Of a stretch of DNA of 64,000 nucleotides, positions 15,888 to 52,107 are shown piece by piece. Made by a program: the position numbers and the translations under genes. Where the stretch lies: IMG/VR virus record IMGVR_UViG_3300046559_001153, positions 1-64,000 of that record. One strand, given 5' to 3'. The notes beneath the pieces were generated by a model that was not told where the DNA came from, ran no database searches, and saw only the letters and a program-made list of their open reading frames with translations. Position 1 is the first letter of the stretch. Every line of letters begins with the position of its first letter.

Positions 15888-17675
15888 ATGGCCGTCGACT
15901 ATCCTGTTAATCCCGTCGCCATGGATCAGGCTCCACTTGGTGGCACGAACTTTCCGTTCGTGGACACCTCGACGGGTCTGGAATTCCTCATTGCCGATCT
16001 CAACCTGACTTACTCTGACGACGCGTCTGTCTTCGCTTTACCGTTCCGACTCGACTGGCTGCACGGCTTCGGCTCGATGCCCCACTCGGCACCGAGTTTC
16101 GCGCCGACGCCTACCCACGCTCAGGATGTCTTAATCCGTGACGCCAACGAGCAGGTAGTATTCAGCTCTGCTACTGGCAGCTTCAACGTGACAGTCTGGA
16201 ATTCCAGCCTGACTGTTCTGACCTGGAAAACAGCGATGGGGGTTTTGTCGCTCGTCTGGGTTACACAATGGCCCAGCGGACCGACGGCCCCGAACTATTT
16301 CACGAATATCGCCTTCACAAACGTCAAACTTGATTTGCGTACCTGCCAGCGTCTGCCGCCGCATGTTACGGGCATCAAAATCGGCAGCACGGTCTACACA
16401 GGCCAGATTCAGCTGGCGGCCGGGTATAACATCAATCTCGAAAAGGTTGAACAAACGGGCTTTGATAGCGGTATCCAGAATGTGACGGCCCTGCAGATTG
16501 ATGCCGTTCCAGGCGCGGGCCTGGGTCAATTTTCAGACTGCACAGAGGCCAATGTCGTACTACGCAGGGTTAATGGCCAGAGCCCTGACAGCAATGGGAA
16601 TCTGCAGTTGGATCTCGCCGGCTGTTATCGATTGCAACTGGCCGGAGCCATAACGTCGACCAGCCCGCGTGTGTTCAAAACGACACTCGGAACGTTGCAA
16701 TTCAGCAACGACTGCGCCCCATGCTGCGATTGCCAGGACTACGTCAACACCTATCGAGGCCTGACGAACGTTTGGAACCAGTTCTACCAGATAGACGTGG
16801 ACGCTCACCAGGCAAGAGACCAGTTGCAGGCAAACATCGCGAGATGGGATTCACAAAAATCCTGTCGTGAGGCAACAGCGGTTCGTTTGTTAATGGTCCC
16901 GTTCTGTCCATGCCTGATCGGTGTGGTCGGATCGTACTGCAATATGACTGGGACCTGCCTGACAAATGTGACAATGACGTTCAACTTTTCCGGGCTGACC
17001 GAGCTGTCGCCGGACGTGATCTGTGGCCAGACTGTGATCAATAACGATCAGCAGTACGCATTGGCCGGGTCGTGGCCTCAGTATACGGCTTACTTCGACA
17101 ACGTCAGCGCTGGACAACGAGTTTCGGTTCAATTTGCGGTGGAGGCAAAAAACTGTCAGTCGTCTGAGCCGTTGACTGGAACACTCGGTGTTGCGTTCGG
17201 GGCGTCGTCAGCCACACCGCCGCCATCCGCCAGTCAGTCGATCTTGATGCTGGCGCCGGATGGAATCACCGGAGATTGTTGCGATCCCGGCGCAACTTTA
17301 GGGACGTCGTCTACGTCCTCCACGACGTCTAGTACTACTACGACTACCACCACTACCACGACCACAACTACCACCACTACCACGACCACAACTACCACCA
17401 CTACTACGACCACGACCACCACTACTACGACCACGACTACCACCACTACTACGACCACGACCACCACTACTACCACGACTACCACCACTACTACGACCAC
17501 CACTGGCACGTCCGGTACCGGATCGCACGTATGCCAGGCCGTCTGCTCGTGGATGTGGATGGGCGATACATGGTCCTTGCAATCTGGTTGTGAGGTCGGT
17601 TGCGGATGCGCGCCACCTGGAGCTTGTCCGGGCTGCTTTGTCGGCCAATTAGCCGGGTCGGACTGCCACAATTAA
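15888..17675 (+). CDS. Cys-rich tail-associated paralog 2 with poly-Thr stalk
   Basis: NFPF; LAAGYNI; RVNGQSPDSNGNL; CAPCCDC; 57 Thr; Cys/Trp C-terminal module. Confidence 0.65.
   Translation: MAVDYPVNPVAMDQAPLGGTNFPFVDTSTGLEFLIADLNLTYSDDASVFALPFRLDWLHGFGSMPHSAPSFAPTPTHAQDVLIRDANEQVVFSSATGSFNVTVWNSSLTVLTWKTAMGVLSLVWVTQWPSGPTAPNYFTNIAFTNVKLDLRTCQRLPPHVTGIKIGSTVYTGQIQLAAGYNINLEKVEQTGFDSGIQNVTALQIDAVPGAGLGQFSDCTEANVVLRRVNGQSPDSNGNLQLDLAGCYRLQLAGAITSTSPRVFKTTLGTLQFSNDCAPCCDCQDYVNTYRGLTNVWNQFYQIDVDAHQARDQLQANIARWDSQKSCREATAVRLLMVPFCPCLIGVVGSYCNMTGTCLTNVTMTFNFSGLTELSPDVICGQTVINNDQQYALAGSWPQYTAYFDNVSAGQRVSVQFAVEAKNCQSSEPLTGTLGVAFGASSATPPPSASQSILMLAPDGITGDCCDPGATLGTSSTSSTTSSTTTTTTTTTTTTTTTTTTTTTTTTTTTTTTTTTTTTTTTTTTTTTTTTTTTTTTTTTGTSGTGSHVCQAVCSWMWMGDTWSLQSGCEVGCGCAPPGACPGCFVGQLAGSDCHN
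17334..17504 (+). repeat. (ACN)57 tract encoding 57 consecutive threonines
   Basis: 171 nt of mixed ACT/ACC/ACG/ACA codons in frame. Confidence 0.95.
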
Positions 17676-24744: not shown

Positions 24745-26826
24745 ATGAGTCAGACCCCCAAAAGATTTTTACTGGTCCATCGACGAGCCGTCGGCGACAC
24801 GGTTGTCATGACGGGCGTGATCCGGGATTTGAAGCTGACTTACCCGTCGATCCCCATCCACGTGTATTCGAATTACCGGGATGTCTGGCTCAACAACCCG
24901 CACATCGAGAGCTTTGATCGAAACGAAGTACCGGGGGCGGAGCGACATTCTCTGTGCTACTCGCGATCCATCAACATCGCCGAGAAGGGCACGAGATTGC
25001 ATTTCCTGGGCGCCTTCCATCAGGACTTCACAGTCAAAGCCGGCGTCCCGGTTGAACTGCTGTATCCAACCCCCGACCTGCATCTGTCGCCGGACGAGCT
25101 CGTTCCGCCGCTTGACCGTCGATACTGGGTTGTTCTGGCTGGTGGCAAGTCGGACGTTACGATCAAGCATTGGGACTACAGCTGGTACCAGCAGACGGTC
25201 GACCTGTTGTCGGACTACGGGATCCCGTGCGTTCAGGCGGGCTCGGTCGAACGCGGTCACACGCATGAGCCGTTGAACGGGGTTCTCAATCTGGTCGGAC
25301 AGACCAATCTCCGGTCATTCATGCGGTTGATCTATCACGCAGACGGGGTGATATGCCCAGTCACATCGGCCATGCACATTGCCGCGGCCTTCAACCGGCC
25401 CGCGGTGGTTATCGCCGGCGGCCGGGAAGCCTGGTGGTGGGAGGCCTATCGCCGCGAGAATCAGGGCCTCGGGAAAAATCACGAACTGCTCCCCGTATCG
25501 CACGCTTACTTGCATACAATTGGTTTATTGCCCTGCTGTCAGGACAAGGGGTGTTGGCGTGCACTGGTTAATCCAATCACGCCGGAAGACTTCACGTCAA
25601 AACGAATGAAGACGATGTGTCGAGACGTCGTCAAAGAACCAGGTCGTCAGATCTTGCCACGCTGCATGGCCATGATCACCCCACAGCATGTTGTTTCCGA
25701 GGTCCTCATGTACTACGAAAAAGGCGTTCTTCCTCCGATCGGGCAGGCAAGACAACTGCCCCCCATTCCTGGAGTTGGCCATGCGATTCACCAACCGGCC
25801 CAAACGGCTGCGGCACCCCTACTTCTACCCGGTACGCTGCCGGGACAAATCTCGACTCCCAATGACACCGCACAATTACAGGCCCCGCAAATTCTGGGAC
25901 TGGCCCCGGACACGCAGGCAGGCGGAGCAGGACTTCTACGCTTAAATCCGCCGGTCGTTACGGATGCGAGACTGATCAAACCGCAACCAACGGTGTCGGC
26001 GATCCGATTGACGGTTCCTGTTCAGGCCGTACTCGAGCAAGCCGCATCAATCCTCGACCATCCGATCGTCGGTGGCAAATTTACGATCTGCACTTTGGCT
26101 TACGGTAAATTCCCCCACCTGATCAAACGGTGTATCAGCTCGATTCTGGAGTCTGTGCCGCGGAGCCGACTCGATCTACGGATTGGCGCCAACGCCTGTT
26201 GCGACGAAACGCTGGAGTACATCAATAGCCCTGAGGTGGGGGCGACCAAGGTCTACAACCACCCGGAGAACGCTTACAAGTACCCTGTAATGCACGAGAT
26301 GTTTCATGACGCTAGCTGCCCGATCCGATCGAACTATCTGGTCTGGTTCGACGACGACAGTTACGTAGTCAAAACGTCCTGGCTGACCGACCTGGCTCAG
26401 GCCATCATTGAGAACCACAATCACAAGGTGGGCATGTACGGGATCAAATTCATCCACGATATCAAGTCGTTTGCTCGAAACGGACACGATCCTCGCCAGT
26501 GGTTCCAACAGGCAACCTGGTGGAGAGGCCGTCCGTTCCAGACGTCTGGCGGCGGTGAGGCGCCCAATGCGACGGCCATCCACTTCGTCTCCGGCGGCTT
26601 CTGGGCGATCTACACGCCGCTGATCAAACAGGCTGACATTCCGGACATCCGCCTCAGAAACAACGGTGATATGCAGCTGGGGGCTGCCTGCCACCAGCAC
26701 GGTTACAAGATTCGCGATTTCAACCGGAACAAGACCCACGTATACTCATCCGGAGCGGCCAGACGCGGCGTCCAGCACAATTTCCCGTGGTCACACGAAC
26801 AGCCCTACGAACGCCTCATCAGTTGA
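24745..26826 (+). CDS. Bifunctional glycosyltransferase: GT9 (heptosyltransferase-like) plus GT-A/GT2-like
   Basis: AVGDTV, K.W, LVGQTNL..ADGVI...TSAMHIAAAF..P; Pro/Gln linker; WFDDDS DxD motif. Confidence 0.8.
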   Translation: MSQTPKRFLLVHRRAVGDTVVMTGVIRDLKLTYPSIPIHVYSNYRDVWLNNPHIESFDRNEVPGAERHSLCYSRSINIAEKGTRLHFLGAFHQDFTVKAGVPVELLYPTPDLHLSPDELVPPLDRRYWVVLAGGKSDVTIKHWDYSWYQQTVDLLSDYGIPCVQAGSVERGHTHEPLNGVLNLVGQTNLRSFMRLIYHADGVICPVTSAMHIAAAFNRPAVVIAGGREAWWWEAYRRENQGLGKNHELLPVSHAYLHTIGLLPCCQDKGCWRALVNPITPEDFTSKRMKTMCRDVVKEPGRQILPRCMAMITPQHVVSEVLMYYEKGVLPPIGQARQLPPIPGVGHAIHQPAQTAAAPLLLPGTLPGQISTPNDTAQLQAPQILGLAPDTQAGGAGLLRLNPPVVTDARLIKPQPTVSAIRLTVPVQAVLEQAASILDHPIVGGKFTICTLAYGKFPHLIKRCISSILESVPRSRLDLRIGANACCDETLEYINSPEVGATKVYNHPENAYKYPVMHEMFHDASCPIRSNYLVWFDDDSYVVKTSWLTDLAQAIIENHNHKVGMYGIKFIHDIKSFARNGHDPRQWFQQATWWRGRPFQTSGGGEAPNATAIHFVSGGFWAIYTPLIKQADIPDIRLRNNGDMQLGAACHQHGYKIRDFNRNKTHVYSSGAARRGVQHNFPWSHEQPYERLIS

Positions 26827-31117: not shown

Positions 31118-32731
31118 ATGGCCGTTTCGAGCACTGAAGAAGTCGTTTCTACAAGTCCCCTGCAACATCAACTGGAGGATTACATCAAGGCCGGGTTCAC
31201 TGGAATCTGGATCAACACGTATGAGCATCTGAACGTTATCGAAGAGATTTGCGATCTGCGAAAGCAATACGGCTGGAATGTGGCCGTATGGGACAGTGAC
31301 CTGGGAATCCGCCTGGCCACCGACAAAGGAGTTATCCCCGTAAAGGAGATCACCTCGGGTGTCCCAGACCAGTTGCGGACGGTCTCCACCCCGGGATCGG
31401 CCGCCACGCTGGCTCGAACCTGGTATGACGAGGAGTTCGATCCAGACGACACAAGCCCTGACCGACGACCGCCTACACCACATGTCGTGGTGTTACGCAA
31501 TTTTCACGGCTATGCCAGCGCCACAGCACAGATACTGCAGAATACTGTCGAAATGTGCCGACGGTTGTGTTCGTTCACGATCATTCTCAGCGCGTTGCAG
31601 AGGATCCCGGCCGAACTTGAAAAGGACTTCGTGGTCATCGCCTACGATCTCCCGAACAAGGATGAGCTGAAGAAAATCGCCGGCAACCTGCTGAAAGACG
31701 ACGAGCAGGAGATGCTGGACGAACCGGAGACTGACAAGGCCGTTGAGGCTGCACGCGGTCTGACCCGCATTGAAGCCGAAAACGCGTTCAGTCTGTCGCT
31801 CGTCCAGACAGGATCAAAACGCCTCGAGTACCGATCGGTCTGGCAGCAGAAAAAACAGATGGTCTCGAAGAGCGGTCTGCTCAACTTTTACGAGGGCCAG
31901 GAACAGCTGACTGATCTGGGCGGTTTGGCGTCGCTCAAGAATTTCTGCCTGAAGGCCCTGCTGCACAAACCGGATGCTGTGGCCAAACCCCGCGGTATCC
32001 TGCTGATCGGACCGGCCGGTACAGGCAAATCGGCAATCGCTAAGGCTCTTGGAAATGCGGTCGGACGTCCGACGATCTCCCTGGACCTCGGATCGCTGAT
32101 GGGCAGTCTGGTTGGACAGACTGAATCCCAGACGCGTCAAGCCCTGCAGATTATCGACGCGTGCAGTCCGGCGATCCTCATGGTCGAAGAAGTCGAGAAG
32201 GCCCTGGCTGGCACCCGCTCGTCGGGACAAACGGACGGCGGCATTATGGCTCGCATGTTCGGCATGCTGCTCGCGTGGCTTAACGACCACGAGTCAGACG
32301 TCTTCTGCGTGATGACCTGTAACGGGGCTGAAAGCCTGCCGCCAGAGTTCACACGCGCTGAACGTTTTGATGCGACCTTCTTCCTGGATCTGCCCACGAA
32401 GAAGGAGAAAGCGGCCATCTGGCCGATGTACATCAAGCACTTCCGACTGACCGACAAACAAACAGCACAAATGCCAATGGACGAAGACTGGACTGGAGCC
32501 GAGATCCGCTCGTGCTGTCGTTTGTCTTCGCTATTGGACATTTCGCTGGTCGAGTCGGCCAACAATGTGCGGCCGGTTGCCGTGACTGCCAAGGAGTCGC
32601 TGGACTCGCTGAGAACGTGGGCATCGGCCCGTTGCCTGAGTGCCTCTTATCCCGGTCCGTACGCCAAAGACAAGAAGTCACCGTCATCGGGGACTGGCGG
32701 ACGCCAGATCCTGAAGAGCGAGAATAACTAG
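31118..32731 (+). CDS. Ycf46-like AAA+ ATPase
   Basis: Degenerate N-terminal AAA (IP.ELEK, GLT..EAE); Walker A GPAGTGKS, Walker B variant MVEEVEKAL, LPPEF.R.ERFD, WTGAEI. Confidence 0.85.
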   Translation: MAVSSTEEVVSTSPLQHQLEDYIKAGFTGIWINTYEHLNVIEEICDLRKQYGWNVAVWDSDLGIRLATDKGVIPVKEITSGVPDQLRTVSTPGSAATLARTWYDEEFDPDDTSPDRRPPTPHVVVLRNFHGYASATAQILQNTVEMCRRLCSFTIILSALQRIPAELEKDFVVIAYDLPNKDELKKIAGNLLKDDEQEMLDEPETDKAVEAARGLTRIEAENAFSLSLVQTGSKRLEYRSVWQQKKQMVSKSGLLNFYEGQEQLTDLGGLASLKNFCLKALLHKPDAVAKPRGILLIGPAGTGKSAIAKALGNAVGRPTISLDLGSLMGSLVGQTESQTRQALQIIDACSPAILMVEEVEKALAGTRSSGQTDGGIMARMFGMLLAWLNDHESDVFCVMTCNGAESLPPEFTRAERFDATFFLDLPTKKEKAAIWPMYIKHFRLTDKQTAQMPMDEDWTGAEIRSCCRLSSLLDISLVESANNVRPVAVTAKESLDSLRTWASARCLSASYPGPYAKDKKSPSSGTGGRQILKSENN

Positions 32732-38647: not shown

Positions 38648-39850
38648 AACGGGAGCCTGGACCTCGGCCAGCTTCTTGAGCTGTTCGGTGCTGAAGCCGA
38701 CCGGTCGGTAGGCGGCCTGCTTGATCACGGGGAAAATCCCACTGTCGCGCAACAGCTGGTCAAACAGGTGAGCATCCGGTTGGGGCAGAGTGGCTGCAAC
38801 TTCAGCCATCTTTTCCGGGTCGACATGCAACCCACTGCGAACGGCATCCACGATGTCATCCCCGAACACGGCGTGCAGATCGTCAAGCGGAACCCGCTCA
38901 AAGTCCTTCATCGCGTAGATCGAACCGGTAGTTGTCGCACAGTGCGAGTCTCGCCATTCGGCCACCTTGGTGATGGTCACGCCAAAACAAGCTTCTTCGG
39001 GTCGCAGAATGTTCTCGGTGTAACGACCAGACAGTCCGATCGCCTTGTCGACTTCGTCGAGAACTTGAGCGATCTTGAACTGCATATCCCTGTTGACTGC
39101 CAACGACGGCAGATTCTCTGTCGCATCGGCCAGCTTGGTCAGTCGTTCTCTCGTTGCCGATTCCTTGGCCAGTCGGGCACGCGTGCGGATGGCCGCGGCG
39201 ACGTGCTTGCCGGTGGACATCCCGCGGCAGGCGTGTTGTTCAAGCGGCTCGTACGCGTCTTCCAGGTCGGTACCCAGATCGGTTGCCCGTTTGAGAATCT
39301 TGTCGGCCACGACGTGTCGGTCGTTGAAAGCAAACGAATCGCGATACTGCAGGAACCAGTCGGCGGCCGCTTTGACTTCGTTGACGTTACGCAGTGGCAT
39401 GCGACGGGTCTTGGCGCCGGTAGCCTCGTCCACCCAGACGTAGGCGAACTGGCTGTCCGGCAATTGGTCACTCGCATCCTTGTAGAGCTCAGTGTGACGG
39501 ACGCGAATAGCGTCACAATGGGCCTTGATTCCGAAGTGCGAGGCTGATTTGGCCAATCGCTCATCGACCCAGGATGCTTCCTTGGTCGTGTATTCAGATC
39601 GTTTTTCGGTGAAGAAGAGCGAGCTCAACCATGTCTCCGCCGCCGTCTTGCAGGGGAACAGTCGGCGAACCGGATCACCATACACATTGACTGGCGGACG
39701 AGATGGTTGCAAAATTGTTTCAGCTGTCTTCTCGCTCTCCCCGGCTAGATAGGCCGTGACGAAGGCCGGAGCCGAATAGAGTTTACTCAGGCGATGCCAT
39801 TCGCGGCCCTGGGGATCGTGTGCGTGATCGAAAAGCGTCGCGTCAGCCAT
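38645..39850 (-). CDS. K-x-A-rich protein, putative head/assembly protein
   Basis: 401 aa; 13 of 23 Lys are in K-x-A; same strand as terL. Confidence 0.55.
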   Translation of the reverse strand: MADATLFDHAHDPQGREWHRLSKLYSAPAFVTAYLAGESEKTAETILQPSRPPVNVYGDPVRRLFPCKTAAETWLSSLFFTEKRSEYTTKEASWVDERLAKSASHFGIKAHCDAIRVRHTELYKDASDQLPDSQFAYVWVDEATGAKTRRMPLRNVNEVKAAADWFLQYRDSFAFNDRHVVADKILKRATDLGTDLEDAYEPLEQHACRGMSTGKHVAAAIRTRARLAKESATRERLTKLADATENLPSLAVNRDMQFKIAQVLDEVDKAIGLSGRYTENILRPEEACFGVTITKVAEWRDSHCATTTGSIYAMKDFERVPLDDLHAVFGDDIVDAVRSGLHVDPEKMAEVAATLPQPDAHLFDQLLRDSGIFPVIKQAAYRPVGFSTEQLKKLAEVQAPV

Positions 39851-39874
39851 TTTGACCTCGAAGCGAGAACTGAA

Positions 39875-42601
39875 ATGATCGAGTTGGGTTCACAGACCAA
39901 AGTCATCCACAAGAGTAAGCTCGTATCGCCCGACGTCAAGCTTGCCATTTCAGAAGTTCTGATGGCACTTGGGCTCCCGTCCGGGCCCAACGTTCTGCAG
40001 TCAAGCATAACCTGTCCGTTTTGCGATCACAAGCAATTCTACCTCTACTTGCTCTCCGACGGGGGCCATTGGCACTACTGTTTCGACTGCAAACGTAAGG
40101 GCGATCTGGTCGAGCTGGCGGCCGGTATCTGGCAATTGCCGATTCGAGACACGCTGGCCAGACTTCGAGACATGGCCTTGTTCACCGATACTCGAGCGTT
40201 AGACGCCATCATGCAAAATGAAAAAGAGATGGATCCGTGGAAGTATCGCCAGGCTATTATGGCTTTCTGGGAAACAGCGTCAGAACGCGCCCGGACCGGT
40301 AGTGGTGGGTCAACTCTCGGCGACCTGCGAAACAAATTGGGGATTCGACGTCTCGGCCAACGCCCTGACGTCTGGGCTGCCGGGCTCGGCCAACTGTTTG
40401 GCGAGACCACAGCAAAAGAGGCCCGAGCTCTAGCCCACCCAATTGAAGATTTTGCTGGCCAGAAGAGGATGCGAAGACGAGAGTGGAAGAATGTCCTTGT
40501 CTTGCCGTACTGCCAAGTACCCGAACATATTAGCGCGTTCCTGTTTGTAGGGCGGGAAGGGAAACAATCTCGAGGCGATCACAACTACCAGCCCCTAACA
40601 GCCCGCACGTACGACGAGGCGCCCGACGCCGGCTTGTGGGGGATGTCAACAGCCTGGACAGCCGGAGACGGCTGGCACGACTGCGTGCTGGCCCTCGAGG
40701 ATCCTGTTCTTGCTTTGAGATTGCAGCAACAGCATCTGTTGGCAAATCGTCTTCCGGTCCCCATCGTGTGCTGGTACGACAACGGAGCAATTAAATCGAC
40801 ACAGTGCTGGCGGACATTGCGGGGCAAAAGGGTTATCTTCGTCGCCGACACGTTGACACCCCGGCTGATGCAGCAAGTCAAAATTGCTCGCGGCGAACTT
40901 GTTATCTACGACACGACGTACGACGCCACGCGATTCTGGAAAGACACGTCGGCCAAAGACATGGTCCATCAGTTTTCGGCTACAGCCAAACCTTTAGGTG
41001 AGGCGATCGCTGACTGGCTGCGAACAGCCAAAGCCGTGGAGATAGAGGAACTTTGCCTGGCCTGCGAACGTGCCAATTTTGATCTGGAAGCCGAGTTAAA
41101 GGCGATCAACCGTCCTTTACTGGAAAGAGCCCGACAGTCGGCCGGGAAGACCGCTAACCGGCTGCCAACCATCCAGTTATCGAGAGACACTAAAGTCAAG
41201 CTCGCCATTACGGAATGCGAAAACGAATGGTTGATCAGTTCGCAGCGAACTAAGACCCAGGATGTCGGTTGTAACTGCGTCCTGCGAATCGACCGGACGA
41301 TTTTCTGCCCGGGGCTGGACTCCCCTATTTACGCCGGCCGAGTGTTATACAAAAAGGACGTCATCGACTTCCAGGTTTTGTCGTCGAGACTGGTTAAGGT
41401 CAAGTCTTGCCGATTGTGGCTGGCCAAGTTGCTATTGAAGCGTTTGGGGATCCCTCTTCAGGTCGATCGACGAATTGCCGGGGAGCTGCTGAAAATCGCG
41501 TTGATGTTCAGGCAGCCCGAACGGGTTGACAGTTCGCCGAGAGTGGGCTGGATCAATGACGGACAGCAATTTCAATTGCCCAATCTGACAATTGGAAGTT
41601 CCATTCAGACTCGACTCGTGAGGACGCGACTCGTTCCCGGCTTGAAATTCAAGAAGGTCGAACAACCTGATTTCTCCGGCATGAGAAACAATGAGTCGTC
41701 GCACGCGTTCTGGGCCCTCTTGTCGCTCGGTCTGGCCAACATCATTGCACCGCTACACGGGAAAGAGACAGCCGGGATAGGTCTTCTCGGTAAGGGCGCA
41801 TCTGAAATGGGCAGGTTAGTCGCTGAACACGCATTGGGGATAGCCCCGTTCCGCGGCGTGAGCAGCCTGGGTGAAACGACCGGGAAGATCAGAAAATTGG
41901 AATCGAGACACGCCTGGCCGGTCTACACGGACAAGGCCAGCGAGCAACCGTTTTACAAGCCGTGGCTCCAGTTGTACGGCGTTTCGAAAAACGCCATCGT
42001 ACCGCTCAGCCCGCGTTTGTCGAAGGGTTTGCCTCTTCTCGCCGCCTGGCGACTTGTGACAATCGAAGAGCCTCTCCGCGAGATGGCCTGGATGCGAACT
42101 GAGGGCGAAAAAATAGTTCCCTCCTACCTGGAACACATTTGTCAGAATCAGGTTCAGTTCAATCTTCGCAAGCACTGGGCCAAGGTCATCCTGGAAGATC
42201 TAGCTGAGTGGGTCGGTGAGCGCGAGGGCGATCCCGGGTGTGTGCTGGCTGCTACCAAATACTGGCGGCTCGACTTACCAGCCTCGCAGGGGAAGGCTGT
42301 ACTGGATGTTCTTTTAGCTGGCTACATGTCCGATCGAATAAGCAATGTCCGTATTGAATTTGAACGCACAGTCCGGCTTGGTGTTTTTACAGTAGAAAAT
42401 GAGTCTGAACGTTACCTGATCGTGCCACCGTCTGCCTTCATCAAGTCGGCCGACCGATTGGGACTTGGCGTACTCTCTCCGGCCATAGCCGAGAAAGCTC
42501 TCGCCGATGCTGGCTACCTGTTGGGGCATCAAACCACGGGCCCGCGAACTGGGTGGCGAGTAAATCTGGACGTCTGGAACGATTGTTTGAAAGGATTATA
42601 G
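39875..42601 (+). CDS. Large protein with primase-type N-terminal zinc finger
   Basis: CPFC..WHYCFDC..KGD.VEL; no intact TOPRIM or Walker A visible. Confidence 0.55.
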   Translation: MIELGSQTKVIHKSKLVSPDVKLAISEVLMALGLPSGPNVLQSSITCPFCDHKQFYLYLLSDGGHWHYCFDCKRKGDLVELAAGIWQLPIRDTLARLRDMALFTDTRALDAIMQNEKEMDPWKYRQAIMAFWETASERARTGSGGSTLGDLRNKLGIRRLGQRPDVWAAGLGQLFGETTAKEARALAHPIEDFAGQKRMRRREWKNVLVLPYCQVPEHISAFLFVGREGKQSRGDHNYQPLTARTYDEAPDAGLWGMSTAWTAGDGWHDCVLALEDPVLALRLQQQHLLANRLPVPIVCWYDNGAIKSTQCWRTLRGKRVIFVADTLTPRLMQQVKIARGELVIYDTTYDATRFWKDTSAKDMVHQFSATAKPLGEAIADWLRTAKAVEIEELCLACERANFDLEAELKAINRPLLERARQSAGKTANRLPTIQLSRDTKVKLAITECENEWLISSQRTKTQDVGCNCVLRIDRTIFCPGLDSPIYAGRVLYKKDVIDFQVLSSRLVKVKSCRLWLAKLLLKRLGIPLQVDRRIAGELLKIALMFRQPERVDSSPRVGWINDGQQFQLPNLTIGSSIQTRLVRTRLVPGLKFKKVEQPDFSGMRNNESSHAFWALLSLGLANIIAPLHGKETAGIGLLGKGASEMGRLVAEHALGIAPFRGVSSLGETTGKIRKLESRHAWPVYTDKASEQPFYKPWLQLYGVSKNAIVPLSPRLSKGLPLLAAWRLVTIEEPLREMAWMRTEGEKIVPSYLEHICQNQVQFNLRKHWAKVILEDLAEWVGEREGDPGCVLAATKYWRLDLPASQGKAVLDVLLAGYMSDRISNVRIEFERTVRLGVFTVENESERYLIVPPSAFIKSADRLGLGVLSPAIAEKALADAGYLLGHQTTGPRTGWRVNLDVWNDCLKGL

Positions 42602-42603
42602 GG

Positions 42604-42876
42604 ATGTTGACGCAGATTCACGTGAACCAACATGTCATTCGAAAAAACAAGAAAACGGGGAAACGGGCGCCTGTGCTGACGGTCAAAACGTCTAAAGGCG
42701 TTCTACGAGGAAACAGAGTCATAGCGCCGGGGTTTGAGGTGGTCTACCAGCCTGACGATCCGTTGAGCTGCGGTGCTCACGTCTGGGTCGAGACAACTGA
42801 TGATGTTGTTGTTCAGCAGAGAACGAGAACCAAGCGACGTCGATGCCAGCGAGTCCCTGTCAAACCGAAGGATTAG
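42604..42876 (+). CDS. Small phage hypothetical protein
   Basis: IHVNQHVI..N.K.G...P.LTVK, VY.P..PLSCGA.VW.ET. Confidence 0.7.
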   Translation: MLTQIHVNQHVIRKNKKTGKRAPVLTVKTSKGVLRGNRVIAPGFEVVYQPDDPLSCGAHVWVETTDDVVVQQRTRTKRRRCQRVPVKPKD

Positions 42877-43332
42877 ATGACCACCCTCGACGATCTTCAG
42901 TTGTTAATCACGCTGCCGGAAAAGGGGAAGAAGTCCGTCAAGCTCGACGAGGGCCGAGTCACCTGGCGGGGCAACTCGGGCGGCTGCCGAGTCGGGACGG
43001 TCATGTTCCAGTTCGACGCCATAGAAACGACAGTTTACATTCCCCGATTGTACGGCGGACGTAAGATGTTGAAGATGCTCATGGAGCTGGTCAACCAACC
43101 GAGTTGTACTCTTTACGACGTCTGTTTCACGCAGATTGACGATTTGTTCGTGAAGTTTGACCAGATGGAAGCATCCAACGCAGAGAAGTACATGCCGACA
43201 GGCCAGATGGGTACAATACACGGACTCACATTACAACGGTTCCACCTGCCAAATATGTCGCACATCGCTATCGGACCTCAGCCGGAAGACAGGCGTTGGG
43301 GAACTGGTGGTAGAAGGGTTATCATCCGATGA
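42877..43332 (+). CDS. C-terminal tag protein 1 (..WGTGGRRVIIR)
   Basis: AAGGA SD; ATGA coupling to next gene. Confidence 0.7.
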   Translation: MTTLDDLQLLITLPEKGKKSVKLDEGRVTWRGNSGGCRVGTVMFQFDAIETTVYIPRLYGGRKMLKMLMELVNQPSCTLYDVCFTQIDDLFVKFDQMEASNAEKYMPTGQMGTIHGLTLQRFHLPNMSHIAIGPQPEDRRWGTGGRRVIIR

Positions 43333-43658
43333 GCGATGACGAGGCCACACTGAACGATGACCAGGTGCGCGAGTTGAATACAGCATTCTTCGAGGCGTTG
43401 GCTCTACCGGCGGATTCGCCCGGGCATCGCCTGGTGGCGGATTGTGCCAACGATTTTACTCGCATGCGAATGCTTGAATCGGGACTCATACGAAGTTTAT
43501 TTCCGCCGATCCCGATAGACGGAGAGCCTCAACTTGTGACCACGCCATCGAGTTTTCCAAATCCATTGTTTGGATACTGGGACACGTCGCTCGGAGAACC
43601 GTACAAACCACGGCGGTCAGTCTGGCAACGGCCTAATAGAAGGATAATCATCCGATGA
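43329..43658 (+). CDS. C-terminal tag protein 2 (..WQRPNRRIIIR)
   Basis: ATGA coupling on both sides. Confidence 0.7.
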   Translation: MSDDEATLNDDQVRELNTAFFEALALPADSPGHRLVADCANDFTRMRMLESGLIRSLFPPIPIDGEPQLVTTPSSFPNPLFGYWDTSLGEPYKPRRSVWQRPNRRIIIR

Positions 43659-44014
43659 GACGTTTTGAATGCGTAGCCGGAAGCGCCAATAAATTCTGGG
43701 AGGTCCGCGTCGACGGTGTCAGAGTACACGTCCGGTTCGGCCGACGCGGCACAAACGGTCAGTCCGAAACAAAAACCATGGATACCCCGGCGGCAGCTCA
43801 GCGGTACATGAACACTAAGATCAACGAGAAGCGTAGAAAAGGGTATGTGGAGATTGTTCCCACTGCGCGACCCATCCTGCGGGTGTCTCCAGCCGTCGAA
43901 TCGCCGCGGAGACGTGAGACGGCGAGTGCTCCGCCAGTCGCCCAACAAACTGCAAACGCTGCCAGGGCCAACAGACAATTCGACACCACGAAGAAACGGA
44001 TTATCCTGCGATGA
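43655..44014 (+). CDS. WGR-domain protein; tag protein 3 (..FDTTKKRIILR)
   Basis: MRRFE...G.ANKFWEV..V.VRFGR.GT.GQ..K..EK.RKGY.E. Confidence 0.85.
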   Translation: MRRFECVAGSANKFWEVRVDGVRVHVRFGRRGTNGQSETKTMDTPAAAQRYMNTKINEKRRKGYVEIVPTARPILRVSPAVESPRRRETASAPPVAQQTANAARANRQFDTTKKRIILR

Positions 44015-45051
44015 CCAACGTTCTCAGGGGGTGGGCTGCAAATACGAATTCGCCGGACTTCCGTGCAGAAATTTCCCAATCGACAACGCCAGGCTACGGG
44101 CCGACAAGGCAAGCAGCTGCACCAACTGGAGATCAATCGATGCCAGTCTACGAAGAAAGAAGAGTTAACGATCACCCGGCATTCGCGATGGCACAGGCTC
44201 AGATGAGGGGACTGAATCGCACATTTGGTGATTTTCGCGACCGCCGTATTTATCATTTGACGCTCGGTCACGCCGTACTTCGTTTTGGGCAAGATCCGAC
44301 GCGGCGAGCAATGGCCTATAATCTACGGATAAGCCGCGTCGACTCCTTGAACTACATAGCCATTGAAGCTCCGAATGTCGTATTGCTGCCTAGCGTAGCT
44401 ACCTGGCTTGTCGCAAATGATTTGTTTGGCGAGCTGAACATTCTCGATCCCCACGCTGGCAGCATGACTTTTTCTAATTGCCGACTTTCGAGGGTGGGCA
44501 CAGGAATTCTCGGCCGAACAGGCGCAGGACAGGCGGTCCAGACCATTGACGGTATTTCGATCTTTTGTAGCAATGGAGACGTGGTTGTAGACGCGGCAGC
44601 CTTGCCTGGACCGTCGCCCGGACTGTTGCCTTCAGGCAGCTCGTTAGGCGAGGCGAGTTTGCGGCTGCTGCACGGCGATCAGCCCAACCTTCATCCTCCA
44701 CAGGTTATAGGAGCGATCCAGGCGGATGGCAGTTGGGTGTCCGTCCCGCCACCGTCATCTGCCCCGCAGGACATAGGAGCGATCCAAGCGTTCCGAGCGG
44801 CAGAGTCTGGCAGGTGGTCGCCCATCAACCCGCCGTTGTCCGCTCCGCCAGTACAGTCACAGGAATACGCCGACTACTCTGATCGGGTGGCGGACGCCGA
44901 AGGAGGGCAGCTTTACTCGCCGGAAGAGCTTAATCGCCGGGCCTGGGCCTTAGTAGATCAGGCTCAACAGAACCTAAAACGCCAGGAAGCCGTGCAGGCA
45001 AGAAAGGCCCGAGTGTGGAACAAGACGACAAAACGCATTGTAATTCGTTGA
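44011..45051 (+). CDS. C-terminal tag protein 4 (..WNKTTKRIVIR)
   Basis: 346 aa; internal duplication IGAIQA...W..PP.SAP. Confidence 0.7.
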   Translation: MTNVLRGWAANTNSPDFRAEISQSTTPGYGPTRQAAAPTGDQSMPVYEERRVNDHPAFAMAQAQMRGLNRTFGDFRDRRIYHLTLGHAVLRFGQDPTRRAMAYNLRISRVDSLNYIAIEAPNVVLLPSVATWLVANDLFGELNILDPHAGSMTFSNCRLSRVGTGILGRTGAGQAVQTIDGISIFCSNGDVVVDAAALPGPSPGLLPSGSSLGEASLRLLHGDQPNLHPPQVIGAIQADGSWVSVPPPSSAPQDIGAIQAFRAAESGRWSPINPPLSAPPVQSQEYADYSDRVADAEGGQLYSPEELNRRAWALVDQAQQNLKRQEAVQARKARVWNKTTKRIVIR

Positions 45052-45572
45052 ACCTGCGTAACTGGCTCAACACGTTGGTCCGCCGCATCAAGGTGGCTGT
45101 GTTCGGCCGTCAAAATTTGCCGGTCGTTGAGCCAGAATCACGTACCTACGACCAGATCGAGGCCGCACTAGCTTTCGACACTAGGGTCCTACAAGAGTAC
45201 ACTGACGCGCGATATCGACAACTAGCCCACCTGCGAGGACTCCGCGACTCTCGGACGGTTGTATTTCCGGGACATGAGGTGATCATTAACGGAATCGATT
45301 GGTCGGCCACAGGCCACCAGACGATGCAAGCACGCTGGGAAGCCATGGCCGCTCGCGAGTTGCAGACTAGTGAAGACAGCCGGCTTATTGAGCAGTTGCC
45401 GGCTTCCAAGCAAACTGACACCAAAATTACGCCTCCCCATCCCACTCCCAAACGAGCGGTTCACTGGGTTCCAGGTAAGCCTCGAGTTCTCCTTCGAGAG
45501 CGTACTTCTGCGAGTTCGCCAGATTCGGCCAGCGACCCTGGCTGTGCCACAGAGCCACGCAGCCCATGTTGA
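45048..45572 (+). CDS. Tag protein 5 (..WVPGKPRVLLR plus extension), overlapping terL 3' end
   Basis: TTGA coupling; 146-bp convergent overlap with terL. Confidence 0.55.
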   Translation: MNLRNWLNTLVRRIKVAVFGRQNLPVVEPESRTYDQIEAALAFDTRVLQEYTDARYRQLAHLRGLRDSRTVVFPGHEVIINGIDWSATGHQTMQARWEAMAARELQTSEDSRLIEQLPASKQTDTKITPPHPTPKRAVHWVPGKPRVLLRERTSASSPDSASDPGCATEPRSPC

Positions 45573-47280
45573 CGGCCTGGGCGAAGTCGTCGGGGTGCAT
45601 GGGGTTCTTGCCGATCGTGTAGGCTTCTTTTCCGAATCGTGTCGGAATCTTCTCTTCGACGAGCGACAGGAAGTCGTTCATCAGGCCTTCATGATCCTTG
45701 TCCAGGTAGTCGTACTGGAAGAACCGGATCTCGCAGTTCTTGATCTGTTGGCACGTCAGCAAGAGGCTGCGAGCCTTGTCGACCTGCCAGTGCTCCTTGG
45801 GGTGCTTCTCAGTCGCCAGCTTGAAGGTGAGGATATTCGCAAAGGCTGCACGAACGTAGGCGACCGGCATGATCCTCGACTGGGGCATACCTGTATGCAG
45901 CAGGAATGTTTCACGTAACGACCCGGCGCCCGTGTAGTCATGCACAAGAGCGTCGCACTTGAAGACGCGGAAGAATCTGGCAGCCATCTGAGCTTCGACA
46001 ACGTGTTCAGACGGGTTCAACGATCGATGCCCGTAGATCACGTCAATCTTTCCGTCCGGCAGCATGCCCATGACGGCAAAGGTTGTGAAGCTCTGGAACC
46101 TCTCACCTACGGCACCCCAGTCAACAGACAGGATGACCTTGATGTAGTCCCCTCGAGGAACCATTTCGGCCTGCTCAAACGTATTGCGGTGCGGGAGACT
46201 GGCCGCTCGTTTGAGGTCCGTTCGTGTGACCAGCTTGGTTCCCGTATCGGAGCTCTCGCCCAGGATTTCGTTGTGGAAGATGGCTTGGGTCATGTTGCCA
46301 GCGCCAGCCTGTCTGGCCAGTAGTTCGGCCCATTTTTCCCGGCTTGCATAGTGGGCCGGGAAAATAATCTGCGGCATGTGGTACCCGGCCATCGTTTGCC
46401 GTTTGTCAGCCACCTGGTGGATCCACCAGCCGTTTCTCGGATCGACTGGCTTGCGACATTTGGCACAGATGGTGCCCGGCCGCCTTGGACCGATGTCTGG
46501 GTGCCACGGTCCGAGCATCTTCTCCAGGTCGTGTGTCAGCGCGGGCACGTTGTCGTAATGGCATGCGTCGCACGGTACGATCCATTCGGCCATGCTGGAC
46601 GACGACCAGAGACCCTCGAGCGTGTTATCGAGAGTCAACGGAGTTCCGGTGTACAGCTCCCAGCCCCAGCGCGAGTAGGCCATAACCTGGGTGATCACAC
46701 CGATCAACGAACTGTCCAGGTTTTGAACTTCGTCAAAATTGATCTCGTCGCCCGACACGCCGCGGATACGATTCGCGTCACGAAAGGCAAAACTGAAAAT
46801 CATCATCGATTTGTTGCGGAATGTTTTCTGCAGCACGCTGCCGTTGCTCTTGCTGTTGACGAACAGCGTTCGCACGGGCGAATCGTTGATGAACGGCTCG
46901 ACGTAGTTTGTCGAGAACCGGCGAATCTGCTCGAACAGGGGAGTAACTGTGAGCAGCTTGAAATGCTTAATCGCATTGCACCGAGCCAGACCGATCGCGG
47001 CCAGACTGGTCGATTTTGAGATCTGGCGACCCGCCTTAACGACGGTCACTTTTGGTGAATGCGTTTTGAATAACGGCTCGAACGGAAAATGGTCATCGAG
47101 CGAATAAGGTTTTCCGTTCAGTGTGAACAAACTCGACAGAATCGGCCGCAACGTAGGGATATGCGTCTGTTCGAAAAATCGCAATTCCTTTTTGAGCTTC
47201 GCGAGCTCACGTTTAGAAAGCGGTGGTTTCTTTCTCGGCCCCTCATCCTTTTCAGGAGACAAAATTGCGTCCAAATCCAT
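45427..47280 (-). CDS. terL: Terminase large subunit (lambda gpA-like)
   Basis: KAGRQISKST, RIRG, FDEVQ, GTP, CxxC pairs, GYH..Q, NEILGE, nuclease SVDWG and DDFAQA. Confidence 0.85.
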   Translation of the reverse strand: MDLDAILSPEKDEGPRKKPPLSKRELAKLKKELRFFEQTHIPTLRPILSSLFTLNGKPYSLDDHFPFEPLFKTHSPKVTVVKAGRQISKSTSLAAIGLARCNAIKHFKLLTVTPLFEQIRRFSTNYVEPFINDSPVRTLFVNSKSNGSVLQKTFRNKSMMIFSFAFRDANRIRGVSGDEINFDEVQNLDSSLIGVITQVMAYSRWGWELYTGTPLTLDNTLEGLWSSSSMAEWIVPCDACHYDNVPALTHDLEKMLGPWHPDIGPRRPGTICAKCRKPVDPRNGWWIHQVADKRQTMAGYHMPQIIFPAHYASREKWAELLARQAGAGNMTQAIFHNEILGESSDTGTKLVTRTDLKRAASLPHRNTFEQAEMVPRGDYIKVILSVDWGAVGERFQSFTTFAVMGMLPDGKIDVIYGHRSLNPSEHVVEAQMAARFFRVFKCDALVHDYTGAGSLRETFLLHTGMPQSRIMPVAYVRAAFANILTFKLATEKHPKEHWQVDKARSLLLTCQQIKNCEIRFFQYDYLDKDHEGLMNDFLSLVEEKIPTRFGKEAYTIGKNPMHPDDFAQAVNMGCVALWHSQGRWPNLANSQKYALEGELEAYLEPSEPLVWEWDGEA

Positions 47281-51492: not shown

Positions 51493-51659
51493 TATTGCAG
51501 CAACAAGCGTTGGCCAATCTGTCTGAATTTTTGGAGCGTCTTCCCACGAAGACAGAGGCCCTGGTCCTGTTTACGACTGACATCTCCCTGGAAGACTGGC
51601 GAGAGACCAAGCGCTGGCTTGAAAAGGCAGCAACCGCAGAAGGAGTTCGATGTGAATGA
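51489..51659 (+). CDS. 56-aa hypothetical protein (not in ORF track)
   Basis: GAGGAG SD, GTGA overlap. Confidence 0.5.
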   Translation: MILQQQALANLSEFLERLPTKTEALVLFTTDISLEDWRETKRWLEKAATAEGVRCE

Positions 51660-52107
51660 AATCACCGTTTTGACGTGGGGAATTTTCGATTTGATTCATC
51701 CTGGCCATATGCGACTGCTTCGTAAGGCCCGCTGGTACGGCACTCGACTGGTTGTCGGGATCAACTCGGATGACTCTGTGCAGACGATCAGGATGTCAGA
51801 CAACCGGCCCGTTATGAACGAGTTGGAGCGGGCCTATGTGCTGCGGCACGTTGTCGGTGTTGACGAGGTGCGAATCTTTGATGCACCGAACGCGGCCGAT
51901 CTGATCTATTCTGTCCGTCCACGGTTTGCTGTTAAAGGCGGCAGCATTCCCGTGTCTGAAGAATTGGCTCTCAGCGACGTGCATGCCAAGTTCATTTATC
52001 TGCCCCCTTTGCCATCCCATCCGCATACTACCGAGCTCATCGGGCGAGCTTACGAGATTTACTGTGACGAACAAGGAATACCATGCCACCAAAGAAAGTT
52101 GCGTTGA
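51652..52107 (+). CDS. HxGH nucleotidyltransferase (RfaE/HldE domain II-like)
   Basis: GIFDLIHPGH, LVVGINSD.SV, RPV..E.ER, VD.V.IF, VKGG. Confidence 0.85.
   Translation: MNEITVLTWGIFDLIHPGHMRLLRKARWYGTRLVVGINSDDSVQTIRMSDNRPVMNELERAYVLRHVVGVDEVRIFDAPNAADLIYSVRPRFAVKGGSIPVSEELALSDVHAKFIYLPPLPSHPHTTELIGRAYEIYCDEQGIPCHQRKLR

What the first reader, a model, noticed from the sequence alone, without database searches (positions are those of the whole stretch)
42877..45572. Five coupled, unrelated genes share an 11-residue C-terminal tag [WF]-x4-[RKP]-R-h-h-h-R
Seen: WGTGGRRVIIR*, WQRPNRRIIIR*, FDTTKKRIILR*, WNKTTKRIVIR*, and WVPGKPRVLLR in the fifth gene (followed by 24 extra residues). The aromatic residue is exactly 11 from the last Arg in all five, codons vary, most tags follow a Pro-rich or low-complexity linker, and the genes are chained by ATGA/TTGA overlaps. 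The N-terminal domains are unrelated (one is WGR). Inference: a modular adaptor system in which variable bait domains are delivered by a common beta-strand tag to one hub (host protease/AAA, Sm-like ring, or the phage Ycf46-like ATPase). I know of no description of it.
Basis: partly seen in the sequence, partly recalled or inferred. Interest (0 to 1): 0.86.

Follow-up and report, generated by a model that had tools for sequence, protein, structure and literature searches.

The report
Five phage proteins share one tail-tag
Five neighbouring, otherwise unrelated genes of an uncultured giant phage carry the same 11-residue peptide at or near their ends; the peptide is real and under selection and looks like an address label for one common partner, but that partner is not known.

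Summary
The regex [WF]x4[RKP]R[IVL]3R occurs exactly five times in the six-frame translation of the 64 kb window. All five lie in 43297-45497 on the + strand. Simulated windows give 0.15 hits on average. Four copies are followed directly by a TGA stop. The fifth lies 24 residues before the end of its gene and is written antisense to the conserved 3' end of the large terminase gene.

Selection acts on the peptide, not on the DNA. In the last five codons the second positions never vary, while first and third positions do. The Arg at position -5 uses both AGG and CGN codons.

The parts in front of the tags are unrelated. One is a WGR domain whose closest homologues stop right after the domain. 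Three others (g1, g4, g5) have no relative in billions of proteins. No tag was found in relatives of the phage, in IMG/VR pattern scans, or in the 63% of the 224 kb genome that I read, which includes the head genes.

The best reading is a shared docking or targeting peptide on modular accessory proteins. In concept it resembles the T4 capsid-targeting sequence, the SspB tail that binds ClpX, and Hsp70 client peptides. The partner was not identified. This is a new variant of a known kind, of moderate interest.

The parts
42604..42876 (+). g0, the untagged upstream neighbour. It is a small basic protein, conserved in a relative, and it marks the left border of the island.
   Evidence: phrog_8676, E=4e-15. 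47% identical copy in L004. Gene call of 90 aa. It ends ...VPVKPKD, with no tag.
42877..43332 (+). g1, a 151 aa ORFan with tag WGTGGRRVIIR at 43297-43329 followed by a TGA stop. Its own Shine-Dalgarno sequence GAAGGA lies at 42867-42872.
   Evidence: It found only itself among 1.84 billion representative proteins. Codon-usage score is 0.22, typical of this phage's genes.
43329..43658 (+). g2, 109 aa, with an acidic body (pI 4.2), a Pro-rich linker and tag WQRPNRRIIIR at 43623-43655. Its start overlaps the g1 stop as ATGA.
   Evidence: No tblastn match in cultured phages. Its frame is the best of six, but only weakly.
43655..44014 (+). g3, 119 aa. It consists of a WGR domain (residues 5-67, nt 43667-43855), a low-complexity linker of about 40 residues, and tag FDTTKKRIILR at 43979-44011. 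Its start overlaps the g2 stop as ATGA.
   Evidence: Pfam PF05406, E=1e-16. Homologues are 49-58% identical over the domain only, and most end right after it.
44011..45051 (+). g4, 346 aa if it starts at 44011, or 303 aa if it starts at M44 (44140, preceded by GGAG). It has an internal 22 aa repeat, a Pro/Ser-rich region, a predicted helix and tag WNKTTKRIVIR at 45016-45048.
   Evidence: It found only itself among 5.8 billion clustered proteins. The N-terminal 43 codons are not coding-like. AlphaFold2 predicts a helix followed by a hairpin at the C-terminus, pLDDT 63-81.
45015..45572 (+). g5, a 185 aa ORFan. Tag WVPGKPRVLLR at 45465-45497 is followed by 24 further residues. The last 146 nt overlap the terminase gene on the opposite strand.
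   Evidence: It found only itself. The non-overlapping part scores best in this frame, at 0.14. It is called by one annotation and not by another.
45427..47280 (-). Large terminase subunit, convergent with the island. Its codons L595-S606 are antisense to the g5 tag.
   Evidence: phrog_675, E=1e-56. Its C-terminus aligns to the end with relatives. It uses GAA, GGA, GAA and two CTC codons exactly where g5 needs T or G at second codon positions.
39794..42601 (+). Primase-like gene with a weak CHC2 zinc-finger match. It is the conserved left anchor of the variable island.
   Evidence: Homologues sit convergent to the terminase gene in L002, L003 and L004.

Best explanation
The 11 residues, preceded in most copies by one or two more basic residues, form a short linear docking or targeting peptide. 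Its layout is an aromatic residue, a four-residue turn rich in Gly, Pro, Thr, Asn and Lys, and then a basic-aliphatic3-Arg strand that normally carries the free C-terminus. It sits on a flexible linker behind five unrelated N-terminal modules. These modules are encoded in a hypervariable accessory island of a 224 kb phage, between the primase-like gene and the terminase gene.

All five proteins would be brought to the same binding site. The strand would add to a beta-sheet or lie in a peptide-binding groove of that site.

Shown: the motif is real, it is clustered, selection acts on the peptide, it is appended to a domain whose relatives lack it, and it arose a further time by overprinting on the terminase gene.

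Inferred: that it docks onto a partner at all. My split of the 0.5 over candidate sites is as follows:
- About 0.2 for a chaperone or unfoldase machine. This could be the host Hsp70 cleft or the N-domain of an AAA+ protease, in the manner of the SspB tail, or the phage's own AAA ATPase.
- About 0.15 for the interior of the procapsid, so that the proteins are packaged and injected as T4 internal proteins are.
- About 0.15 for some other single partner.
For: - The motif occurs five times against 0.15 expected, all within 2.2 kb on one strand. No such C-terminus occurs among 2021 background ORF segments.
- In the last five codons, the variable sites at codon positions 1, 2 and 3 number 4, 0 and 5 of 5. 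Over the last six codons, position 2 against positions 1+3 gives Fisher p=0.004. The Arg at -5 uses AGG, CGG, CGC and CGA.
- Similarity among the five proteins is limited to the tail.
- WGR homologues lack the linker and the tag.
- The g5 tag lies antisense to a terminase C-terminus that is homologous in relatives. It depends on the terminase's synonymous choices GAA, GGA, GAA, CTC and CTC, with joint probability about 1e-3 under this phage's codon usage. It is therefore not a copied segment.
- Linkers in front of the tags are Pro-rich or low in complexity.
- AlphaFold2 places a beta-hairpin (RVWN / RIVI) at the g4 C-terminus, pLDDT 63-81.
- The last seven residues fit the published DnaK heptamer profile. 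That profile has a hydrophobic core, I/L/M (less often V) at the centre, basic residues tolerated at positions 2-3, and Arg preferred at position 7 (PMC2717214).
- The E. coli SspB adaptor ends ...PPRGGRPALRVVK after a disordered linker. That tail tethers SspB to the ClpX N domain (PMC9963277).
- T4 internal proteins are diverse proteins that share only a capsid-targeting sequence (PMC3012670).
Against: - No partner was identified, and no complex prediction was possible with these tools.
- The motif is known from one phage only, so there is no comparative test.
- The g5 copy is not C-terminal. Either a free C-terminus is not required or that copy is inactive.
- The head module (major capsid protein, putative portal and neighbouring genes) carries no tag. 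The island is co-directional with replication genes. Both points weaken the capsid-targeting version somewhat.
- The DnaK and SspB resemblances do not account for the conserved Trp and its fixed spacing. The SspB register also differs (LRVVK against RRVIIR).
- The AlphaFold2 model of g1 was uninformative, with pLDDT 34.
Confidence: 0.5

Rival explanations
1. Mutual assembly tag. The five tails pair with each other in an intermolecular beta-sheet or zipper, so the five gene products form one hetero-oligomer. In this reading the tags themselves are the hub.
For: The genes are adjacent, lie on the same strand and are partly translationally coupled, which is typical of subunits made in fixed ratios. 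The tails are beta-prone, rich in beta-branched aliphatic residues, and similar to each other. No tag occurs elsewhere in the 63% of the genome that I read.
Against: Each tail carries a net charge of about +4 to +5, which would repel in a homotypic zipper. Only two of the junctions are securely coupled. There is no direct evidence.
Confidence: 0.15
2. Inherited 3' end without a function of its own. Serial duplication or recombination spread one gene end, including its coupling signal (AGAAGG ... CGATGA), and the peptide similarity is a by-product.
For: g1 and g2 share 21 of 23 nt, TAGAAGG.T.ATCATCCGATGAG (family D19). Their Arg-Arg pair uses the two rarest Arg codons of the phage, AGA and AGG at about 8-9% each. 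Together these form a Shine-Dalgarno-like AGAAGG 11 nt before the next ATG. The g3 and g4 tails are each other's closest. Tandem small paralogues are common elsewhere in this genome.
Against: Across all five copies nucleotide identity is only 13-22 of 33, while the amino-acid classes are kept. Second codon positions are invariant, and both Arg codon families are used. g3 and g4 have no Shine-Dalgarno sequence in the tag. The g5 tag cannot be a copied segment, because it lies inside the conserved terminase reading frame. The junction RNAs are not structured, with z-scores of -0.2 to +1.7.
Confidence: 0.12
3. A direct binding tail for a non-protein target. The basic and hydrophobic hairpin with a Trp anchors the proteins to DNA, RNA or the membrane surface.
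For: The tail has a net charge of +4 to +5, with a Trp and three aliphatic residues. The g3 body is a WGR domain and very basic, pI 11.3.
Against: Three consecutive beta-branched aliphatic residues are not typical of nucleic-acid-binding arms. The Gly/Pro-rich spacer argues against an amphipathic membrane helix. The strict spacing and the terminal Arg suggest a specific pocket rather than a general surface.
Confidence: 0.1
4. A cis-acting nascent peptide. Inside the ribosomal exit tunnel the tail modulates termination at UGA and re-initiation at the overlapping AUG. Known arrest peptides also have an essential aromatic residue about 10-12 residues from the P site (from my own knowledge of TnaC and SecM).
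For: The distance from the aromatic residue to the last codon is fixed. All four terminal tags stop at TGA, and three of those stops overlap an ATG.
Against: The g5 tag is not at a stop. The gene after g3 probably starts 125 nt downstream, and the gene after g4 starts 37 nt upstream of the g4 stop. No other coupled junction in the window carries the motif. The known termination-stalling peptides end in Pro, not Arg (from my own knowledge).
Confidence: 0.05

Closest known systems
Capsid-targeting sequence (CTS) of the phage T4 internal proteins
   Same: A short terminal peptide is the only feature shared by a set of otherwise diverse small phage accessory proteins (PMC3012670). That they are encoded in variable loci is from my own knowledge. 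The peptide acts as an address label.
   Different: The CTS is N-terminal, has a different sequence, and is removed by the prohead protease (the last point from my own knowledge). Here the peptide is C-terminal and basic-aliphatic. No virion link is shown, and the head genes I read carry no such peptide.
ClpX-binding tail of the SspB adaptor
   Same: It consists of a folded domain, a disordered Pro-rich linker and a very short basic-aliphatic-basic C-terminal strand that tethers the protein to an AAA+ N-domain. The E. coli tail reads ...PPRGGRPALRVVK (PMC9963277).
   Different: The sequence and register differ: LRVVK against [RK]R-hhh-R with an upstream Trp. None of the five proteins has an SspB domain. 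Binding to ClpX was not tested, and the host is unknown.
Hsp70 (DnaK) client heptamers such as NRLLLTG
   Same: The last seven residues match the published preference: an aliphatic core with I or L at the centre, flanking basic residues, and Arg favoured at position 7 (PMC2717214). In most copies they sit on a flexible linker, which would leave them exposed.
   Different: DnaK sites are generic and degenerate. They do not explain the conserved Trp, the fixed spacing or the terminal position.
Cargo-loading peptides of encapsulins (from my own knowledge)
   Same: A C-terminal peptide behind a flexible linker directs unrelated cargo enzymes into a shell with the HK97 fold.
   Different: The consensus is different (Gly/Ser/Leu-rich). 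Cargo genes sit next to the shell gene, whereas here the neighbour is the terminase gene and the capsid gene lies about 150 kb away.

Membership tests
WGR domain (PF05406), for g3 only | Match to the family profile above the curated threshold | tested here: met
   61.2 bits against a cut-off of 22, E=1e-16, residues 5-67. Invariant RRFE, KFWE, VRFGR and RKGYV blocks are shared with homologues.
SspB-type ClpX-tethering tail | Short C-terminal peptide behind a disordered linker | tested here: met
   Tags are terminal in 4 of 5 copies. Linkers are Pro-rich or low in complexity. SspB architecture is as described in PMC9963277.
SspB-type ClpX-tethering tail | Tail sequence of the LRVVK type | tested here: not met
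   The E. coli tail, read from the genome, is ...ALRVVK. The tags read [RK]R[IV][IVL][IL]R, with three aliphatic residues and a different register.
SspB-type ClpX-tethering tail | SspB substrate-binding domain | tested here: not met
   No Pfam or NCBIfam hit of that kind in g1-g5.
SspB-type ClpX-tethering tail | Binding to the ClpX N-domain | not testable with these tools
   No complex prediction or assay was available, and the host is unknown.
T4-type capsid-targeting sequence | N-terminal position, with removal by the prohead protease | tested here: not met
   The shared peptide is C-terminal. Nothing is shared at the N-termini.
T4-type capsid-targeting sequence | The only shared feature of otherwise diverse proteins in a variable locus | tested here: met
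   The island is absent or different in relatives.
T4-type capsid-targeting sequence | The proteins are present in the virion | not testable with these tools
   No proteome exists. The head-module genes I read carry no tag.
DnaK client heptamer | Hydrophobic core with L/I/M (V) at the centre, basic flanks, and Arg favoured at position 7 | tested here: met
   All five tags fit by inspection against the profile described in PMC2717214. No score was computed.
DnaK client heptamer | Actual binding to Hsp70 | not testable with these tools
   This needs a binding assay.
Termination-stalling nascent peptides (TnaC-like) | The motif ends at the stalled stop codon, with the critical residue in the P site | tested here: not met
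   The g5 tag is followed by 24 sense codons. The last residue is Arg in all five copies. The requirement for Pro is from my own knowledge.

The most novel reading that the evidence does not exclude
A phage-specific modular system in which a C-terminal Trp-turn-RR-III-R hairpin acts as a portable address label. The label lets the phage plug arbitrary effector domains into one host or phage machine: a chaperone or unfoldase, or the procapsid for injection. The label is valuable enough to have been re-invented by overprinting on the terminase gene. This would be a class of viral docking motif in bacteria that, as far as I could find, has not been described.
Probability: 0.3. Interest if true: 0.8.

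Novelty: new variant of a known kind. Interest (0 to 1): 0.55.

Why it matters
Short docking motifs are a main route by which eukaryotic viruses rewire their hosts, but few are documented for phages. A portable 11-residue label would do three things. It would identify a set of co-targeted accessory proteins in a genome that otherwise consists mostly of ORFans. It would point to a host or virion hub that this phage lineage exploits. It could also serve as a compact tag for protein delivery or for controlling protein stability. The copy overprinted on the terminase gene is also a clean example of a motif evolving de novo in an antisense frame.

Tried and rejected
**Searches for homologues**
- I looked for homologues of the tagged proteins to test whether the tag is conserved. 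g1, g4 and g5 find only themselves. g2 has no hit in cultured phages. WGR homologues lack the tail.
- Seventeen relatives (14 distinct loci) with terminase identity of 36-55% came from IMG/VR, metagenomes and a genome bin. They carry no tag and no homologue of g1-g5.

**DNA pattern scans of IMG/VR**
- Three back-translated tag patterns were scanned. Only chance hits in short non-coding frames were found.
- These scans cover a minority of possible codon combinations. I estimate under 10% sensitivity for a tag with unrelated codons.

**Nucleotide-level explanations**
- There is no RNA structure at the junctions.
- There are no convincing promoters or terminators inside the island.
- Stop-codon recoding is rejected, because TGA ends 10 of 21 long genes.
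- Frameshifting is rejected for lack of a slippery site.

**Structure and family searches**
- A profile of the tag against PDB sequences gave nothing meaningful.
- The AlphaFold2 model of g1 was uninformative.
- PADLOC and NCBIfam gave nothing for g1, g2, g4 or g5.

**Other**
- Population variation is absent. All assemblies are identical across the island.
Full report
**What the sequence is**

The window is positions 1-64000 of a 224,270 bp viral contig, IMGVR_UViG_3300046559_001153. It has 55% G+C. Its large terminase is at most 26% identical to that of any cultured phage.

The window carries baseplate and tail genes on the left. It also carries a classic-clade AAA ATPase at 31118-32731, a primase-like gene at 39794-42601, the terminase on the minus strand at 45427-47280, and replication genes further right.

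The finding lies between the primase-like gene and the terminase gene.

**The observation**

Five + strand ORFs (g1 to g5) occupy 42877-45572. The regex [WF]x4[RKP]R[IVL]3R matches the six-frame translation of the whole window exactly five times, once in each ORF. One hundred order-2 Markov simulations gave a mean of 0.15 matches and never more than one.

In 0.96 Mb of unrelated viral contigs, none of 2021 ORF segments ends in R-hhh-R. In the window, 4 of 329 do.

Four tags are followed directly by TGA. The fifth, in g5, is followed by 24 more codons.

All-against-all BLASTP finds similarity only in the last 13-23 residues. The g1/g2 tails and the g3/g4 tails are the closest pairs.

The same 3.3 kb was assembled with 100% identity from several independent samples.

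**Are they genes, and are they coupled?**

I trained a codon-usage log-odds score on 22 long genes of the window. It puts each of the five frames first among the six. g1 scores like a core gene (0.22). g2, g3 and g4 score only weakly positive. The non-overlapping part of g5 scores 0.14.

The first 43 codons of the long form of g4 show no coding preference. One gene caller starts g4 at M44 (44140), behind a GGAG, and another calls the long form. One annotation calls g5 from GTG 45015, and another does not call it at all.

Secure ATGA coupling therefore exists only for g1/g2 and g2/g3.

In those two tags the Arg-Arg pair is encoded AGA-AGG. These are the two rarest Arg codons of the phage. They form a Shine-Dalgarno-like AGAAGG 11 nt before the next ATG. 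This is a nucleotide-level overlay, and it is absent from g3, g4 and g5.

**Peptide or nucleotide signal?**

Across the five copies, nucleotide identity is 13-22 of 33.

| Codons compared | Variable sites at position 1 | Position 2 | Position 3 |
|---|---|---|---|
| Last five codons | 4 of 5 | 0 of 5 | 5 of 5 |

Over the last six codons, position 2 against positions 1+3 gives Fisher p=0.004. The Arg at -5 is encoded AGG, AGG, CGG, CGC and CGA.

This period-3 pattern is the signature of selection on residue type, not on a DNA or RNA element. The junction RNAs fold no better than shuffled sequences, with z-scores of -0.2 to +1.7.

**The fifth copy**

The g5 tag (45465-45497) is antisense to terminase codons L595-S606. 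The terminase C-terminus aligns to its very end with three relatives. It was therefore there first.

In this phase, second codon positions of g5 face terminase wobble positions. The terminase uses GAA, GGA and GAA where g5 has Val-Leu-Leu. It uses CTC twice where g5 has Arg. Given this phage's codon usage, the joint probability is about 0.043 x 0.17 x 0.17, or roughly 1e-3.

This copy therefore cannot be a transplanted segment. Either it was written into the antisense frame under selection, or it is a coincidence with a chance of about 2e-4 for a protein of this size. I take it as independent support that the peptide itself is wanted.

Why no stop follows the tag is unexplained.

**Modularity**

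g3 is a WGR domain (Pfam E=1e-16), followed by a low-complexity linker of about 40 residues, followed by the tag. Its eight closest homologues are 49-58% identical over the domain only. Six of them are 68-78 aa long and end right after the domain.

g1, g4 and g5 have no relative other than themselves, in 1.84 billion representative proteins for g1 and in 5.8 billion clustered proteins for g4 and g5. g2 has none in cultured phages.

The N-terminal bodies range from acidic (g2, pI 4.2) to very basic (g3, pI 11.3). Each tail adds about +4 to +5 charge.

Single-sequence AlphaFold2 was uninformative for g1 (pLDDT 34). For g4 it was uninformative for the body, but it gave pLDDT 63-81 for the last 40 residues. 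There it predicts a helix and then a beta-hairpin with strands RVWN and RIVI around the KTTK turn. The Gly/Pro/Thr/Asn-rich four-residue spacer in all five copies fits a turn.

**Distribution**

Relatives with 36-55% terminase identity were found in IMG/VR, in metagenomes, and in one contig binned with an alphaproteobacterial genome. They keep the primase-like gene convergent with the terminase gene, but they have no tag and no homologue of g1-g5.

In L002 the two anchor genes abut each other. In L004 the gap holds three zinc-ribbon paralogues and pentapeptide-repeat ORFs. The island is therefore hypervariable.

Back-translated pattern scans of IMG/VR found only chance hits.

I walked the contig with exact-protein look-ups. 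In total I read positions 1-120,844 and 182,566-203,504, which is 63% of the genome. This stretch includes about 90 small accessory genes and the head module with the major capsid protein. No further tag appeared.

**Mechanism**

These features are what one expects of a short linear motif that docks onto a partner by strand addition:
- a terminal basic-aliphatic-basic strand on a flexible linker;
- a fixed upstream aromatic residue;
- conservation across unrelated bodies.

Three known systems work like this.
- SspB has a folded domain, a disordered region and a short terminal segment that binds the ClpX N domain (PMC9963277). Its tail, read from the E. coli genome, is ...PPRGGRPALRVVK. This is similar in kind but not in register.
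- DnaK prefers heptamers with an aliphatic core, I/L/M at the centre, basic residues tolerated at positions 2-3 and Arg at position 7 (PMC2717214). The last seven residues of all five tags fit this.
- T4 internal proteins are a diverse set that shares only a capsid-targeting sequence (PMC3012670). That signal is N-terminal.

None of the three explains the conserved Trp and its spacing, and none could be tested here.

I therefore commit only to the general model, a shared docking or targeting peptide, at 0.5. The rivals are a mutual assembly tag (0.15), an inherited gene end with a coupling signal (0.12), a tail that binds nucleic acid or membrane (0.10), and a cis-acting nascent peptide (0.05).

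**Verdict**

The motif is not a member of any family I could name. In concept it is a new variant of terminal address labels.

Interest is moderate. The motif is striking and has an unusual overprinted copy. However, it is confined to one uncultured phage, and no comparative or functional handle is available yet.

Noticed in passing
window 3519, 12495, 37207, 38628, 55990, 63082 (21 nt each); also L163 near position 6426: A palindromic motif, consensus CGTAACTTTTCAAAAAGTTAA, sits exactly at gene ends six times in the window and at least once more at about 197 kb of the contig. It looks like transcriptional punctuation, either a terminator or a promoter/operator. None lies inside the tagged island.
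   Followed up: partly
L003:8066-11332 (same phage as L089 and L213): The terminase of a relative is a 1088 aa ORF. The homology is split into two pieces by an insert of about 1.4 kb that ends ...HTFVANGIGVSNC. This is probably an intein.
   Followed up: no
window 44698-44724 and 44764-44790: g4 contains an internal tandem repeat with a 66 nt (22 aa) period, PQ[VD]IGAIQA..., inside its Pro/Ser-rich region.
   Followed up: no
window 17293-17538: A repeat with a period of 9-15 nt encodes a Thr-rich low-complexity stretch near the end of ORF 15888-17675 in the structural region.
   Followed up: no
L004:11885-14250; L002:11767-11770: The gap between the primase-like gene and the terminase gene is hypervariable among relatives. 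It holds three paralogous CxxC zinc-ribbon proteins and two pentapeptide-repeat ORFs in L004. In L002 it holds nothing, and the two genes overlap by 4 nt.
   Followed up: partly
L002:11767-14523 (minus strand): The primase-like protein of relative L002 ends ...FTAREQHRLKIVR. This is vaguely tag-like (aromatic residue, basic residues, aliphatic run, terminal Arg), but the spacing differs and a Lys lies inside the aliphatic run. It could be chance.
   Followed up: no
window 44011-44139 and 45015-45572: The two public annotations disagree. One calls g4 as 346 aa and omits g5. The other calls g4 as 303 aa from M44 and calls g5 as 185 aa.
   Followed up: yes
window 63122 onward; L317:11164-14439: A 1091 aa protein fuses a uracil-DNA glycosylase domain to a family A DNA polymerase with an exonuclease domain.
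   Followed up: no
L322:14746-15624 and L322:17387-18404 (contig 115182-116060 and 117823-118840): Two pairs of adjacent small paralogues share C-terminal endings (...DATHI.W... and ...L.AAN[IL]). Tandem duplication of small genes is therefore common in this genome.
   Followed up: no
window 24745-26826 and 51619-52107: The phage encodes a family 9 heptosyltransferase fused to a family 2 glycosyltransferase, and an RfaE-like nucleotidyltransferase. This suggests modification of lipopolysaccharide heptose and a Gram-negative host.
   Followed up: no
L323:4953-7568 (contig 187518-190133): An 871 aa protein sits upstream of the major capsid gene, in a position that suggests a portal. It has a faint LAGLIDADG hit, so it may carry a homing-endonuclease or intein insert.
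   Followed up: no
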